Below, one piece after another: positions 2,660-61,055 of a stretch of DNA of 64,000 nucleotides; position 1 is the first letter of the stretch; the number at the start of each line of letters is the position of its first letter. Location: the IMG/VR virus record IMGVR_UViG_3300048924_000191, positions 62,001 to 126,000 of that record; one strand, 5' to 3'. The translations under genes were made by a program, and so were the position numbers. The notes beneath the pieces are model-generated. The model was not told the origin of the DNA, did no database searches, and saw only the letters and a list, made by a program, of their open reading frames with translations.

Positions 2660-2690
2660 CATAGAACGCCGAGGGACGTCTCCCTCGGCT
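2660..2690 (-). terminator. Hairpin terminator plus TATGC
   Basis: GCCGAGGGA/TCCCTCGGC stem, then GTTCTATGC on minus strand. Confidence 0.75.
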
Positions 2691-2888
2691 ATTGACTCTT
2701 TTATCAATACCAAAGCACCGGTGATGAGTCGATACTAAGGTCTACGCTAAACTTCCAGGAAAGCGTATCTAAGGCGGTCTTACCGCGCGTTGCTCAAATC
2801 AGGGAGCTGGACGAGCGCACTCTGCCCTTACTGTGATTCTTGCGATCTTCAAATTGTGAATGAGCTGCGGAACAACATTCTCTACATA
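2690..2888 (-). ncRNA. Candidate structured ncRNA 1 (~200 nt)
   Basis: No plausible ORF; starts at ATCCTATGTAG and ends at a terminator; stems GAATG/CATTC, GCGGT/ACCGC, TACGCT/AGCGTA, GACTC/GAGTC. Confidence 0.45.
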
Positions 2889-3386: not shown

Positions 3387-4208
3387 TTACAGGGCGAAGT
3401 GGTAGAGCTGTCCTACGTCACCGACGTCGAGGAGCGGGTACGAGGTAGCTGATACCGAGAGGACCGGAACGTTAGCCCGCCCGACGTATGCGGAGCGCGA
3501 GAAGGTCATAGTTACGGTGAAGGTCTTTTCACGGCATGGGGTTACCTTGATCGGCAGCCCAATTCCGAAACGATGTAGCACTTCATCTACCGACAATAGA
3601 TACAACTGGTGTTGTTCGATCAGATACAGGTCGTTCTGATGCTTAACGTGGAAGAGACGATTGATTTCGTCTTGCAGATCTTTACGCAGTGCGATTCCGA
3701 AACCTGCTTCGAACCCGTCATTGATTGCTGCATTACGCAGGACGTTGTGCGGGGTGTTCGGGGTGTGGACGTGGTAGGCATGGCCGTAATCCGGGAGTTG
3801 GAAGACCACCTTCCGGAAGTCTCGCAACCACTCCAGAGCACTGACGATGGAAGTTTCCTTCACGCCACTCAGCGCCAGGCCCATGATCCCGTCAACAGGA
3901 GGGTTGTTGAGCACGTCATGGAATTCGACGTGAGGGTATTTACCGATCAACTCCTTCAACTTGCCATCATCGTCGATCGCCGCCCGTGCCAGCTCACGTA
4001 CCTGGTAGTTGCTGGTCGCAGCGTCCAGGTCGGCGATGACTTGCTTGATAGCTTCCGCACGACCTACGGCAATGGTACCGATACCACGGTAACCGATCAC
4101 TAAGTTGCTGATGTTGCGCACCGCTGTTTCTACAGCGTTGAGAGGACGGCGCGGCCAGTTACTTACGGCGTTAACGACACGGCGTTCTTCAGGGGACAGA
4201 TAGTTCAT
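3387..4208 (-). CDS. Hypothetical protein
   Basis: 273-aa ORF, AGGAG RBS, early-type promoter upstream. Confidence 0.75.
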   Translation of the reverse strand: MNYLSPEERRVVNAVSNWPRRPLNAVETAVRNISNLVIGYRGIGTIAVGRAEAIKQVIADLDAATSNYQVRELARAAIDDDGKLKELIGKYPHVEFHDVLNNPPVDGIMGLALSGVKETSIVSALEWLRDFRKVVFQLPDYGHAYHVHTPNTPHNVLRNAAINDGFEAGFGIALRKDLQDEINRLFHVKHQNDLYLIEQHQLYLLSVDEVLHRFGIGLPIKVTPCREKTFTVTMTFSRSAYVGRANVPVLSVSATSYPLLDVGDVGQLYHFAL

Positions 4209-4244
4209 TTGTCTTGCTCCTAATGGATGATGGTTAATCAAGAC

Positions 4245-4277
4245 TACAATGTATTACCAGCATATTTTTAAAGTTAC
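4245..4277 (-). promoter_or_regulatory. Putative early promoter
   Basis: GTAACTTTAAAAAT...TAATACATTGT matches the recurring intergenic motif. Confidence 0.55.
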
Positions 4278-4279
4278 AG

Positions 4280-4316
4280 CATACAGACCTCCTAGGACCG
4301 AAGCCCTAGGAGGTCT
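4280..4316 (-). terminator. Hairpin terminator plus GTATGC
   Basis: AGACCTCCTAGG/CCTAGGAGGTCT 12-bp stem. Confidence 0.8.
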
Positions 4317-4324
4317 ACACACCT

Positions 4325-4553
4325 TTTCTGACCGATACTTCATCCGTTAGCACATTCCCGCCCCGGCCACGAGAGAATATGCTAACGGCTGAGCGCTCAG
4401 TCTCCAGCTAGCCCCGCCGCTCCCCTTATAAGCGACGTGACTGAAGGTCGTCCGGGGGAACGACCTGCGGCGGCTCTACCCCGGGAGAGTCGGGACCCTG
4501 GGAGAGCTTGAATCGTACGGTTTGCCCAGAACCGTCCGAAGCATCCACGCATA
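4325..4553 (-). ncRNA. Candidate structured ncRNA 2 (~225 nt, closed multi-stem)
   Basis: 5' GAUGCUUC pairs with 3' GAAGUAUC; long internal stems; G-U wobbles valid on the minus strand; ATTATATG upstream, terminator downstream. Confidence 0.6.
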
Positions 4554-4586
4554 TAATAGTAAACGCTCAGTAAAAGTTTACTGCGA

Positions 4587-4994
4587 CTACCAGCCCATGG
4601 TTCTTGGGCGATTGAGCCACTCTTCGTAGACCTTTCCGTTAGCGGTGGTCTTACGTCCGCTCTTGTAGAACCCACTGGTCAGAAAGGCAGTTTGACTCGG
4701 TTTGTTCTCAGGTCTGATCCATGCCTGCCCTGCCTTGTTTGAAAAGTATTGACGGATGAACTGTGCCGCGTATCGCTTACCGCGGTGTTTTGGATCGATG
4801 TAGATAGACCCTACGCGATAATATCCGCCATCGCCTTTCATCGGCATGATGAACCCGATCGTCTCTCCAGTCGGGAGGAAGATGAGTTCCATGCCGTCAA
4901 GTCCAGCCTTGAGAGATTCTGGTCCAAGGAACGGGTCTTTCATGGCCAGATCAAAGAGTCTCTGTTTGGCGCCTTCTACTGTTTCTTTGTTCAT
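4587..4994 (-). CDS. GNAT-family acetyltransferase
   Basis: IYIDPKHRGKRYA (motif A), N..SQ..F...GF (motif B). Confidence 0.8.
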   Translation of the reverse strand: MNKETVEGAKQRLFDLAMKDPFLGPESLKAGLDGMELIFLPTGETIGFIMPMKGDGGYYRVGSIYIDPKHRGKRYAAQFIRQYFSNKAGQAWIRPENKPSQTAFLTSGFYKSGRKTTANGKVYEEWLNRPRTMGW

Positions 4995-13024: not shown

Positions 13025-13053
13025 TGACAATGTATCATCATAAAAAAGTTAAT
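13025..13053 (-). promoter_or_regulatory. Putative strong early promoter
   Basis: TAACTTTTTTATGATGATACATTGTCA; near-identical at 40001-40028 and 61027-61055. Confidence 0.7.
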
Positions 13054-13058
13054 TACAG

Positions 13059-13092
13059 CATACAGCCGGTGGGGAGACCCACCGGCTGTATG
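13059..13092. terminator. CATACAG...CTGTATG hairpin terminator
   Basis: Perfect stem after spanin genes. Confidence 0.85.
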
Positions 13093-22804: not shown

Positions 22805-22849
22805 GTTTTGTATCTCCATTTAGAAAAGTTGCGGCATAAAGAAAAGAAA

Positions 22850-38668: not shown

Positions 38669-38694
38669 GATAATGTATCGTCTAAAAAAGTTAC
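38669..38694 (-). promoter_or_regulatory. Putative early promoter
   Basis: GTAACTTTTTTAGACGATACATTAT. Confidence 0.6.
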
Positions 38695-38731
38695 GACATT
38701 CATACAAACAGTTGTTTCAGTAACTTTAAAC

Positions 38732-51239: not shown

Positions 51240-51535
51240 TCAAGCTCCCGCAGAATGTAACGTTGACCAGATTTGAGCAACGGCAGCTCAATAGCAACTT
51301 CATTGAGTTTAACTTTGCCGGTCAAAGGCAGACCACCGATACTACCTTTCTCGAGATCCGACAACTCATGAACAGAGACGACGGTGGTCGGCTTTGTCGG
51401 GTGTTTGGTCGCTTCGACGCACCCTGGGAGAGCTTTCAGTCCAGCACAAACGCCGTCTGAGTCACGCCATTCGCTGGGGTCGTAGGTGGATTCCATCTCG
51501 ATGTAGATGCCGTAGAACTTCGAATTATCGCTCAT
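51236..51535 (-). CDS. Hypothetical protein
   Basis: Coupled start/stop. Confidence 0.65.
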   Translation of the reverse strand: MSDNSKFYGIYIEMESTYDPSEWRDSDGVCAGLKALPGCVEATKHPTKPTTVVSVHELSDLEKGSIGGLPLTGKVKLNEVAIELPLLKSGQRYILRELE

Positions 51536-56056: not shown

Positions 56057-56077
56057 GTTGTTTTACTCCCGTGTGCG

Positions 56078-56113
56078 GCATAAAGAACCAGGAGTAGCCG
56101 AAGCTACCCCTGG
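56078..56113 (-). terminator. Hairpin terminator plus TTTATGCCG
   Basis: CCAGG(A)GTAGC/GCTAC(C)CCTGG. Confidence 0.75.
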
Positions 56114-60026: not shown

Positions 60027-60099
60027 GGTTTTTAACTCCATAAAGTGGCGCCCACTCCCATTGGGAATGTATTACGATAGGTTTTTTAACTTCGATTTA

Positions 60100-61026: not shown

Positions 61027-61055
61027 CGACTATGTATCATCGTAAAAAGTTTAAC
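61027..61055 (-). promoter_or_regulatory. Putative strong early promoter
   Basis: AAACTTTTTACGATGATACATAGTCG. Confidence 0.7.

What the first reader, a model, noticed from the sequence alone, without database searches (positions are those of the whole stretch)
4325..4557. Candidate ncRNA 2: ~225-nt closed multi-stem RNA with strand-diagnostic G-U pairs
Seen on the minus strand: 5' GAUGCUUC (4545-4538) pairs with 3' GAAGUAUC (4341-4334). Enclosed stems are ACGGUU/AACCGU, CCGCCGC/GCGGCGG (containing AGGUCGU/ACGACCU) and the 14-bp CCGUUAGCAUAUUC/GAAUGUGCUAACGG. The closing stem and the 14-bp stem each have one position that is G-U on minus but A-C on plus. Possible pseudoknots: UCCCC with GGGGA, and CAGUC with GACUG. 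It is preceded by ATTATATG and followed by a 12-bp terminator. It does not show tRNA, tmRNA, RNase P or SRP signatures. Inference: an undescribed structured phage RNA (scaffold, decoy or ribozyme).
Basis: partly seen in the sequence, partly recalled or inferred. Interest (0 to 1): 0.8.

Follow-up and report, generated by a model that had tools for sequence, protein, structure and literature searches.

The report
New structured RNA gene in jumbo phage
The flagged stretch is a real, previously undescribed non-coding RNA gene of about 220-270 bases in a giant soil and root phage; it folds into five conserved hairpins, and its job is still unknown.

Summary
It fills the 380-nt gap between two minus-strand genes of a ~243-kb phiKZ-like jumbo phage from root and rhizosphere metagenomes.

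- **Conservation within the species:** a variant about 7% diverged has only 3 changes in the 221-nt RNA body, against about 15 expected.
- **Homologues:** two much more distant phage lineages (L017, L019) carry a homologue at the same position, although their flanking proteins are only ~30% identical.
- **Structure:** across the three lineages, 93-98% of predicted pairs are kept, against 33-46% in slid controls. Fourteen pairs show changes on both sides.
- **Strand:** G-U counts are 33 on the minus strand and 2 on the plus strand, so the RNA is minus-strand.
- **Transcription signals:** a TATG start motif lies upstream and a covarying hairpin terminator downstream, both conserved.
- **Known families:** Rfam, ARAGORN and BLAST give no match.

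Three of its stems are robust. The closing stem and the CCGCCGC/GCGGCGG stem compete with better-supported helices, and the proposed pseudoknots are not conserved.

The consensus is five hairpins with conserved G-rich and C-rich loops. I infer a trans-acting RNA that works through those loops. No expression data were available.

The parts
4551..4583 (-). Promoter-like region upstream of the RNA. It holds AGTAAAC-TTTTAC and then TATTATATG. The TATG at 4553-4550 would place the inferred start at G4550.
   Evidence: There are no substitutions here in the ~7%-diverged variant L010. The TATGCG motif and the upstream GTAAC/TTTTAC motif are conserved at the same distance from hairpin H1 in L017 and L019. 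phiKZ late promoters have the consensus (-3)TATG(+1) (PMC7618050). The start site is inferred, not measured.
4283..4550 (-). Whole predicted primary transcript: a 221-nt RNA body (4550-4330), a linker, and the terminator hairpin.
   Evidence: Folding z-score is -4.07. Models R1 and R2 score 82-146 bits in three lineages. The body has 3 of 221 differences against a 6.7% background.
4517..4535 (-). The loop contains a conserved UGGGC.
   Evidence: Pair probability is 0.58-0.97. 95.5% of cells are paired across lineages, and the only variation is G-C to G-U type changes (helix 3).
4473..4507 (-). Hairpin H2. Its loop or 3' side carries a conserved pyrimidine motif, CUCUCCC (CUCCUCCCC in L019).
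   Evidence: Two stem positions show compensatory changes: U-A, G-C and A-U at one, and A-U and G-C (plus one unpaired cell) at the other. 93.5% of cells are paired (helix 4).
4445..4466 (-). It is 9 bp with an invariant CCCC loop.
   Evidence: Pair probability is 0.83-0.99. It shows one G-C to A-U compensatory change and U-A to U-G changes. 96.2% of cells are paired (helix 5).
4410..4442 (-). Hairpin H4, with a 7-nt loop.
Evidence: Mean pair probability is 0.82 in the window. Four pairs have changes on both sides across the three lineages, and 88.9% of cells are paired (helix 6).
4402..4409 (-). Invariant junction AGCUGGAG between H4 and H5. Its last base, G4402, is also the first base of H5.
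   Evidence: It is identical in all lineages.
4330..4402 (-). Long irregular hairpin H5. It has a base helix (4402-4397 with 4335-4330) and a middle helix (4394-4390 with 4342-4337). The apical loop has a conserved CGGGG. The conserved segments UGAGCRCUCAG and GGAUG line the internal loops.
   Evidence: 98.1% of cells are paired against 33-42% in slid controls. Five pairs have changes on both sides. In variant L010, G4333>A turns a U-G in the base helix into U-A.
4285..4316 (-). Terminator-type hairpin: 14 bp with a C(UUCG)G loop and no U tract.
   Evidence: Five within-species substitutions (4296, 4297 and 4316 in L010/X15; 4314 and 4316 in L013) all keep pairing on the minus strand only. Between lineages there are 4-5 compensatory pairs (columns 270-276 with 287-293).
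4249..4283 (-). Promoter module of the next gene, not part of the RNA. It reads TATGCTGTAAC...TAATACAT and marks the end of the RNA unit.
   Evidence: The same module follows other hairpins in the window. TATGC[CT]G[CT]A occurs 5 times on the minus strand and 0 on the plus; ATACAT[TA] occurs 8 times against 2. It is conserved in L017 and L019.

Best explanation
The locus is a stand-alone gene for a novel structured non-coding RNA of a phiKZ-like jumbo phage, transcribed from the window's minus strand.

**Shown**
- The sequence is far more conserved than its surroundings.
- It has homologues in two distant phage lineages at the same genomic position.
- Its five hairpins (H1-H5) and its terminator hairpin covary.
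- The pairing is strand-specific.
- It belongs to no Rfam family.

**Inferred, about 0.65**
- Transcription starts at the G of a conserved TATG motif (G4550), as at phiKZ-type late promoters.
- It stops at the UUCG hairpin (about 4285), giving an RNA of about 265 nt that is independent of both neighbouring genes.

**Inferred, about 0.4**
- The RNA acts in trans through its invariant single-stranded elements. These are the G-rich loops of H1 (UGGGC) and H5 (CGGGG), the C-rich loops of H2 (CUCUCCC) and H3 (CCCC), the AGCUGGAG junction, and the internal loops of H5.
- The H3 and H5 loops are complementary in all three lineages. They could dock within one molecule to give a compact fold, or between molecules to give an oligomer.
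- That fold or oligomer would then bind or sequester a protein or RNA partner during infection.
For: **Genomic setting**
- The 380-nt gap lies between a GNAT-like ORF (4587-4994) and ORF 3387-4208, both on the minus strand.
- The source is a ~243-kb phage contig. Its helicase is closest to those of phiKZ-like jumbo phages.

**Purifying selection**
- Variant L010 differs at 6.7% of flanking sites and at 24 of 135 third-codon positions of the GNAT gene.
- It differs at only 3 of 221 positions in the RNA body (Poisson P = 2.6e-4).
- Only 0.5% of 221-nt background windows are as conserved.

**Homologues**
- L017 and L019 carry the RNA directly upstream of members of the same 273-aa protein family.
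- Protein identity there is about 30%, while the RNA stretch aligned with its short flanks is 61-70% identical, with long invariant blocks.

**Covariation and strand**
- 3' domain: 98.1% of cells paired against 33-42% slid, with 5 double-sided pairs.
- 5' domain: 93.2% paired against 37-46% slid, with 9 double-sided pairs.
- Minus-strand sense has 33 G-U and 11 mismatches. The opposite sense has 2 G-U and 42 mismatches.
- All five within-species terminator substitutions preserve minus-strand pairing only.

**Independent transcription unit**
- TATGCG is conserved at a fixed distance from H1 in three lineages.
- The phiKZ late promoter is (-3)TATG(+1).
- The downstream gene has its own recurrent promoter module after the terminator.
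- The upstream gene differs between lineages: GNAT in the window, a 168-aa ORF in L019.

**Non-coding**
- The only ORF from the TATG's ATG stops after 5 codons in L017 and after 3 in L019 (read directly).
- The changes in the window's own variants fit RNA pairing, not codons.

**Loop complementarity**
- The H3 loop and the H5 apical loop give -14.3, -12.2 and -10.6 kcal/mol in the three lineages.

**No known family**
- Searches found none.
Against: **Expression**
- There is no expression evidence.
- The TATG motif is only 4-6 bases long. The wider consensus seen elsewhere in the window ([GT][CT]TATG[CAT][CT]G) is not matched here.
- The terminator has no U tract.

**Limits of the covariation evidence**
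- Only three independent lineages exist, so the covariation statistics are thin.
- The tested structures were derived from these same sequences, which favours them over the slid controls.

**Unresolved helices**
- The loop-loop contact is conserved but shows no clean covariation.
- Two regions have mutually exclusive helices that both find some support: H4 against CCGCCGC/GCGGCGG, and the H5 base against the closing stem. The fold is therefore not settled.

**Missing context**
- The RNA is absent from about nine more distant relatives that keep the neighbouring gene, so it is accessory.
- No partner, target or host is known.
Confidence: 0.5

Rival explanations
1. The RNA is a cis-acting leader, an attenuator or riboswitch-like element, for the downstream 273-aa-family gene. 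The structured RNA would sense a signal and control read-through of the UUCG hairpin.
For: In all three lineages the RNA sits directly upstream of a member of the same protein family, with a terminator hairpin in between. Two pairs of mutually exclusive helices, each with some support, would suit a switch.
Against: The best pairing between the RNA body and the terminator's 5' arm is no better than shuffled controls (fraction at least as good: 0.81, 0.45, 0.07). It also falls at different places in the three lineages. The gene has its own conserved promoter module downstream of the terminator. About nine relatives express the gene family without any such leader. The same hairpin-plus-TATGCTGTAAC module ends other units in the window.
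Confidence: 0.13
2. The RNA is a base-pairing regulatory sRNA. The C-rich loops of H2 and H3 (CUCUCCC, CCCC) would pair with G-rich Shine-Dalgarno regions of phage or host mRNAs and repress translation.
For: Both C-rich motifs are invariant or nearly so in three lineages and lie in loops. The phage's ribosome-binding sites are of the AGGAG/GGGAG type.
Against: No antisense match of 13 nt or more was found in the 64-kb window. The two 12-nt antisense matches are about what chance gives. The complementary G-rich loops in the same RNA suggest internal or self pairing instead. At 220 nt with five covarying hairpins, the RNA is much more elaborate than typical seed-pairing sRNAs. The host is unknown, so host targets could not be searched.
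Confidence: 0.15
3. The stretch is the structured 3' untranslated region of the upstream mRNA, or a 3'-end-derived fragment of it. It would mainly protect that mRNA from exonucleases.
For: The RNA begins only 37 nt after the GNAT stop codon, and no terminator separates them. No sigma-70-type promoter is found there.
Against: The upstream gene is different in L019 (a 168-aa ORF), yet the RNA and its TATGCG start motif are conserved. Exonuclease protection needs only a stable hairpin. It does not explain invariant loops and junctions, or conservation far above that of the coding sequence.
Confidence: 0.1
4. The RNA is closed by pairing of its 5' and 3' ends and contains a three-way junction (CCGCCGC/GCGGCGG enclosing AGGUCGU/ACGACCU). 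It may alternate with the open five-hairpin form as a bistable RNA.
For: In L017 the closing stem keeps 7 of 8 pairs, with two compensatory double changes (U-A to G-C and U-A to A-U). CCGCCGC/GCGGCGG becomes CCACCGC/GCGGUGG in L017 and, with one bulge, CUACCGC/GCGUGUGG in L019. RNAalifold on the five-row alignment A4 chose this stem. In L017 the closed central form costs only +0.7 kcal/mol.
Against: The closing stem fails in L019, with 3 of 8 pairs. It has P of 0.02-0.10 in the window. The central stem costs +5.3 kcal/mol in the window and +8.8 in L019. Its 3' strand is used by H4, which has four double-sided covariations in a column-consistent alignment. The proposed pseudoknots are not conserved.
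Confidence: 0.1
5. The element works as DNA, for example as a replication or packaging signal or an array of protein-binding palindromes, and the hairpins are incidental.
For: It contains a perfect 12-bp palindrome (CTGAGCGCTCAG, 4400-4389) and several inverted repeats. One within-species double change (4353 and 4379) is symmetric with respect to strand.
Against: 33 G-U pairs on one strand against 2 on the other cannot be explained by DNA cruciforms or duplex binding sites. The compensatory changes preserve intrastrand pairing rather than sequence.
Confidence: 0.02

Closest known systems
Intergenic small RNAs mapped in phiKZ-like phages (the 11 sRNAs of Pseudomonas phage 201phi2-1, including sRNA005, which is conserved with phiKZ, EL and PA3; PMC11512511)
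   Same: Both are short non-coding transcription units in nucleus-forming-type jumbo phages, where a terminator follows closely after a promoter. Both are conserved between related phages, have predicted conserved secondary structure, and have unknown function.
   Different: Those RNAs were defined by transcript mapping, and this one only by comparative sequence. The conserved example there is derived from a 5' UTR upstream of a tail gene. blastn at 'distant' sensitivity against 50,697 phage records found no similarity; I assume, but did not check, that this collection includes those phages. This RNA is at the upper end of their size cut-off (<250 bp) and has five covarying hairpins.
phi29 packaging RNA (pRNA, Rfam RF00044)
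   Same: Both are phage-encoded RNAs of 120-170+ nt built from several helices. In pRNA two loops are complementary and drive loop-loop (kissing) oligomerisation (my background knowledge). Here the H3 and H5 loops are complementary in all three lineages.
   Different: There is no Rfam match even at E up to 10. pRNA belongs to small phi29-like podoviruses and to their packaging motor (background knowledge), whereas this is a jumbo phage. The paired 5'/3' ends that define pRNA's helix A are not conserved here.
Large ornate phage- and bacteria-associated RNAs (ROOL, GOLLD, OLE), which form RNA-only homo-oligomers (PMC12286853)
   Same: Both are structured non-coding RNAs of unknown biochemical role. 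ROOL and GOLLD are often phage- or prophage-associated (background knowledge). Kissing and other intermolecular contacts build their higher-order assemblies. That is one possible reading of the complementary loops here.
   Different: Those RNAs are much larger, roughly 580-800 nt by my recollection, and each has an Rfam model, none of which matches. Oligomerisation here is pure inference.
6S RNA
   Same: It is an RNA of about 180 nt that acts as a decoy for a protein, the host RNA polymerase. Such a role would be attractive for a phage that brings its own polymerases (background knowledge).
   Different: 6S RNA is a single rod with a large central bubble (background knowledge), whereas this RNA is five separate hairpins. 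There is no Rfam 6S match.

Membership tests
Any Rfam 15 family (4227 models, including riboswitches, ribozymes, RNase P, SRP, 6S, pRNA, ROOL, GOLLD, OLE and Y RNA) | A covariance-model score at or above the family's gathering threshold | tested here: not met
   The whole window gave 0 hits at gathering scores. Region 4150-4700 at E up to 10 gave only four chance-level hits of 14-20 bits against thresholds of 36-66; two lie on the terminator hairpin and none lies in the RNA body. For homologues L017 and L019, nothing overlaps the RNA body except one weak chance-level C/D-box hit of 15 bits (E 4.2), which spans the 3' tail of H5 and the terminator.
tRNA / tmRNA | A cloverleaf, or a tRNA-like domain with a tag reading frame, recognised by ARAGORN | tested here: not met
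   ARAGORN found 0 genes in the whole window.
phiKZ-like phage intergenic sRNA (as mapped in 201phi2-1 and phiKZ) | An experimentally mapped transcription start followed within <250 bp by a mapped termination site | not testable with these tools
   Only motifs are available: a conserved TATG and a covarying hairpin. No RNA run was shown to hold the locus.
phiKZ-like phage intergenic sRNA (as mapped in 201phi2-1 and phiKZ) | Sequence homology to a described member | tested here: not met
   blastn ('distant' mode) of 4200-4600 against 50,697 phage genomes found no match.
Riboswitch / transcription attenuator | An expression platform: a conserved alternative helix between the sensor and the terminator's 5' arm | tested here: not met
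   The best body-to-terminator duplex is no better than shuffled sequences, and it involves non-homologous segments in the three lineages.
Riboswitch / transcription attenuator | The regulated gene depends on read-through from the leader's promoter | tested here: inconclusive
   A separate, recurrent promoter-like module lies between the terminator and the gene. Promoter activity was not measured.
phi29-type pRNA | The 5' and 3' ends pair in a conserved closing helix | tested here: not met
   The closing stem has P of 0.02-0.10 in the window. It keeps 7 of 8 pairs in L017 and 3 of 8 in L019.
phi29-type pRNA | Two complementary loops that mediate intermolecular ring formation | tested here: inconclusive
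   The complementary H3 (CCCCG) and H5 (CGGGG) loops are conserved in three lineages. They show no clean covariation, and there is no assay of oligomerisation.
Retron msr/msd RNA | An adjacent reverse transcriptase gene | tested here: not met
   Pfam and PHROGs find no reverse transcriptase domain in any neighbour. The downstream protein has a confident fold (pLDDT 93.5) with no PDB match.
Protein-coding small ORF | A reading frame conserved between homologues | tested here: not met
   The ATG within TATG opens a 51-codon frame in the window, but it stops after 5 codons in L017 and after 3 in L019. Indels between lineages do not respect the reading frame.

The most novel reading that the evidence does not exclude
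The RNA would be a new class of self-organising phage RNA. Its conserved complementary G-rich and C-rich loops (H3 CCCCG with H5 CGGGG) would drive a compact tertiary fold or a homo-oligomer. Its two pairs of mutually exclusive, partly covarying helices would make it bistable. On this reading it is an RNA machine, such as a scaffold, cage or switch, used by a nucleus-forming jumbo phage during infection. It might work together with the second conserved non-coding unit 1.5 kb away.
Probability: 0.12. Interest if true: 0.8.

Novelty: new variant of a known kind. Interest (0 to 1): 0.55.

Why it matters
Jumbo phages of the phiKZ type bring their own RNA polymerases. Described members also build a nucleus-like compartment. 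Their RNA biology is barely charted: a handful of small RNAs have been mapped, and none has a known function.

This locus adds a well-delimited RNA family supported by covariation, with clear promoter and terminator landmarks, invariant loops and natural variants. It is also more conserved than the neighbouring protein genes. That gives a concrete object for SHAPE, cryo-EM, pull-down and knock-out experiments.

A second conserved non-coding unit lies nearby, and a strikingly allele-swapped gene of unknown fold lies between them. Together they suggest a small accessory module whose role in infection could be tested once a host is found.

Tried and rejected
**Known RNA families**
- Rfam at gathering and at permissive thresholds, on the window and on the homologues, found nothing.
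- ARAGORN found nothing.

**Similarity searches**
- BLAST of the locus against phage genomes and plasmids gave no match.

**Exact-pattern scans for more homologues**
- IMG/VR returned only the same phage plus two chance hits in coding DNA.
- JGI metagenome contigs gave 0 hits in both scans, so the source samples seem not to be in that collection.
- The GTDB genome scan gave 0 hits with one pattern. A looser pattern gave 48, all weak by model R1 (at most 20 bits, against 82-106 for true members).

**Word-based protein searches**
- Searches with the neighbouring proteins found only themselves.
- The profile search of representative proteins was what found the homologous lineages.

**Paralogues**
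- Models R1 and R2 found none in the 64-kb window or in the roughly 20 other loci searched.

**Other ideas tested**
- **Sigma-70 promoter or classical intrinsic terminator at the locus:** none found.
- **Antisense targets in the window:** none beyond chance.
- **Antiterminator pairing:** rejected.
- **GNAT gene as the RNA's functional partner:** rejected. In L019 another gene lies between the two, and the GNAT homologues in phages FLC9 and FLC1-1B have no such RNA downstream.
- **Function of the downstream protein as a clue:** the AlphaFold model is confident (pLDDT 93.5), but Foldseek against PDB and BFVD and the ESM Atlas gave nothing usable.
- **K-turn, C/D-box, hammerhead and sarcin-ricin motifs:** considered by eye and not found in conserved form.
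not conserved.
Full report
**Setting**

The finding lies in a 380-nt gap (4209-4586) between two minus-strand ORFs. These are a 135-aa GNAT-like protein (4587-4994; weak Pfam Acetyltransf_7 hit) and a 273-aa protein of unknown function (3387-4208).

The window is part of a ~243-kb phage contig from root and rhizosphere metagenomes. Its large helicase is most similar (about 40% identity) to those of phiKZ-like jumbo phages such as Eowyn, Noxifer, Deimos-Minion, FLC9 and LucasX. No close relative exists among 50,697 deposited phage genomes.

**Check of the observation**

Folding energy alone is only mildly unusual:

- z = -2.19 for the minus strand and -1.41 for the plus strand over 4325-4557.
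- z = -4.07 when the terminator is included.

In the thermodynamic ensemble the stems fare differently:

| Stem | Pair probability |
|---|---|
| ACGGUU/AACCGU, AGGUCGU/ACGACCU, 14-bp stem | 0.95-1.0 |
| Closing stem | about 0.10 |
| CCGCCGC/GCGGCGG | 0.005 |

The hairpin that follows is 14 bp with a UUCG loop and has no U tract.

**Variation within the species**

Laying contigs of other public runs on the locus, and then fetching variant contigs by the GNAT protein, gave three haplotypes.

The most distant haplotype (L010/L011) differs as follows:

| Region compared with L010 | Differences |
|---|---|
| Flanking positions | 6.7% |
| GNAT third-codon positions | 24 of 135 |
| RNA body (4330-4550) | 3 of 221 |
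| 4380-4583 | 0 |

For the RNA body the Poisson P is 2.6e-4, and only 0.5% of equally long flanking windows are as conserved.

- Two of the three changes (4353 and 4379) are the two partners of the U-G pair in the 14-bp stem. They turn it into C-A, an isosteric wobble swap. That position therefore does not identify the strand.
- In the terminator, five substitutions in two haplotypes all keep pairing on the minus strand only, through G-C to G-U, G-U to G-C and A-U to G-U changes.

**Distant homologues**

Word-based protein searches found nothing. A profile of the downstream protein, searched against 1.84 billion representative proteins, found a family of 56 representatives.

Fetching their contigs showed two more lineages with a homologous RNA directly upstream of the family gene.

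- **L017** is a 1.75-kb contig.
- **L019** is a 23-kb contig, syntenic with the window: helicase, a 448-aa ORF, GNAT, an extra 168-aa ORF, the RNA, and then the family gene.

| Window against L019 | Identity |
|---|---|
| GNAT protein | 60% |
| The other two neighbouring proteins | about 30% |
| RNA stretch with its short flanks and terminator | 61-70% between lineages |

The RNA keeps long invariant blocks.

About nine further relatives of the protein family have no room for the RNA and give no hit to the models. The RNA is therefore an accessory element of a small clade.

**Structure**

Each lineage, folded on its own, gives the same series of five hairpins plus the terminator.

On MAFFT alignments of the two halves, with the RNAalifold structures, the counts are:

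| Domain | Cells paired | Slid controls | Pairs changed on both sides |
|---|---|---|---|
| 3' domain | 98.1% | 33-42% | 5 |
| 5' domain | 93.2% | 37-46% | 9 |

- Few or none of the 500 shuffles reach the observed values.
- Caveat: there are only three independent lineages, and the structures were derived from these same sequences.
- The sense strand has 33 G-U pairs and 11 mismatches. Eight of the mismatches come from a register shift of H4 in the window. The antisense strand has 2 G-U and 42 mismatches.
- The terminator covaries as well.

**What is conserved outside the helices** (my reading of alignments A4, A6 and A7):

- UGGGC in the H1 loop.
- CUCUCCC in H2.
- CCCC in the H3 loop.
- CGGGG in the apical loop of H5.
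- The AGCUGGAG junction.
- UGAGCRCUCAG and GGAUG, which line the internal loops of H5.

The H3 and H5 loops are complementary in all three lineages (-10.6 to -14.3 kcal/mol).

- **CCGCCGC/GCGGCGG.** This stem can form in all three lineages and shows one compensatory G-C to A-U change. It shares its 3' strand with H4, however, and H4 has four double-sided covariations.
- **Closing stem.** It keeps 7 of 8 pairs in L017, with two compensatory changes, but only 3 of 8 in L019. The competing local helix at the base of H5 is available in all three lineages.
- **Pseudoknots.** Both are absent from the homologues.

A bistable RNA therefore cannot be excluded, but the five-hairpin form is the consensus. 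A short helix between the 5'-terminal GCG and the CGC just before H3 is predicted in all three lineages. It is invariant, so it is untestable by covariation.

**Transcription signals**

- TATGCG lies at a fixed distance from H1 in all lineages. It is preceded by a conserved GTAAC/TTTTAC element.
- In phiKZ the late promoter consensus is (-3)TATG(+1) (PMC7618050). This would start the RNA at G4550.
- After the terminator comes TATGCTGTAAC...TAATACAT. This module recurs behind other hairpins in the window, almost only on the coding strand, and is conserved in L017 and L019.
- The RNA therefore looks like a separate unit between two promoters. This is inferred, because no RNA data were available.

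**What it is not**

- It matches no Rfam family, tRNA or tmRNA.
- It has no conserved reading frame.
- It has no antiterminator pairing with the terminator.
- It has no antisense target in the window.
- It has no paralogue.
- It has no bacterial homologue.
- Its neighbours include no reverse transcriptase and no recognisable nuclease.
- The downstream protein has a confident predicted fold without known relatives.

**Interpretation**

I am about 90% confident that this is a genuine structured non-coding RNA gene on the minus strand.

I am about 65% confident that it is independently transcribed from the TATG motif to the UUCG hairpin.

The mechanism is inferred. Conservation is highest in loops and junctions rather than in stems, and the G-rich and C-rich loops are mutually complementary. 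I therefore favour, at about 40%, a trans-acting RNA. Its loops would organise a compact or oligomeric fold that binds a protein or RNA partner.

Less likely are:

- a seed-pairing sRNA that uses the C-rich loops;
- a cis-acting leader;
- a 3' UTR of the upstream mRNA.

A DNA-level element is essentially excluded by the G-U asymmetry.

**Comparison and novelty**

The nearest known things are the intergenic sRNAs mapped in phiKZ-like phages. They share the genomic logic but not the sequence, and their function is likewise unknown. By possible mechanism only, phi29 pRNA and the oligomer-forming ROOL, GOLLD and OLE RNAs are also close.

This is a new RNA family within the known general kind of phage-encoded structured non-coding RNAs.

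Noticed in passing
window 2660-2886 (-), within the gap 2603-2923: A second non-coding unit has the same layout: a TATG start motif, about 225 nt of RNA, a hairpin at 2689-2668, and then TATGCTGTAAC. It is nearly invariant in variants L010 and L013 and conserved in blocks in the distant lineage L019 (5259-5565). Its folding z-score is -2.47. It contains CCAGCU, the complement of part of the invariant AGCUGGAG junction of the RNA studied here; a 6-nt match is weak evidence.
   Followed up: partly
window 3387-4208 (-); L010:3786-4616; L013:3787-4617: The gene just downstream of the RNA exists as two alleles, of 273 and 276 aa, that are only 31% identical in protein. The phages carrying them are otherwise 93-99% identical in DNA. 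The exchange begins within a few bases of the start codon. The protein family (56 representatives) has a confident AlphaFold model (pLDDT 93.5), with no similar fold in the PDB or among viral models.
   Followed up: partly
window, e.g. 4249-4283, 2653-2665, 13029-13062, 22830-22840, 38670-38700, 56074-56084, 60065-60080, 61030-61045: Recurrent intergenic motifs occur almost only on the minus strand. A hairpin is followed directly by [CT]TATGC[CT]G[CT]A (5 on the minus strand, 0 on the plus). ATACAT[TA] occurs 8 times against 2, preceded by GTAAC/GTTAAA plus a T/A run. These are probably the phage's own promoter classes. The same hairpin-TTTATGCTGT arrangement is seen in Ralstonia phage FLC1-1B.
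   Followed up: partly
window 51421-51435 (-): The 15-nt string AAGCTCTCCCAGGGT from the 5' side of hairpin H2 (4509-4495) recurs on the same strand, inside what looks like coding sequence. About 0.04 such matches are expected by chance.
   Followed up: no
L009:1941-2411 (Ralstonia phage FLC1-1B, LC819005.1): A 470-nt gap without annotated genes lies upstream of this phage's GNAT homologue. It starts near a TATG motif and ends in a hairpin plus TTTTATGCC. It has no Rfam hit, its folding z-score is only -1.0, and it shows no detectable similarity to the RNA studied here.
   Followed up: partly
window 4280-4298 (-): The 3' arm of the terminator reads as a strong ribosome-binding site (UAGGAGGU). 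It is followed after 5 nt by AUG CUG UAA, a two-codon mini-ORF that overlaps the TATGCTGTAAC promoter motif. The same ATGCTGTAA follows the second non-coding unit without a ribosome-binding site, so this is probably a by-product of the promoter consensus.
   Followed up: no
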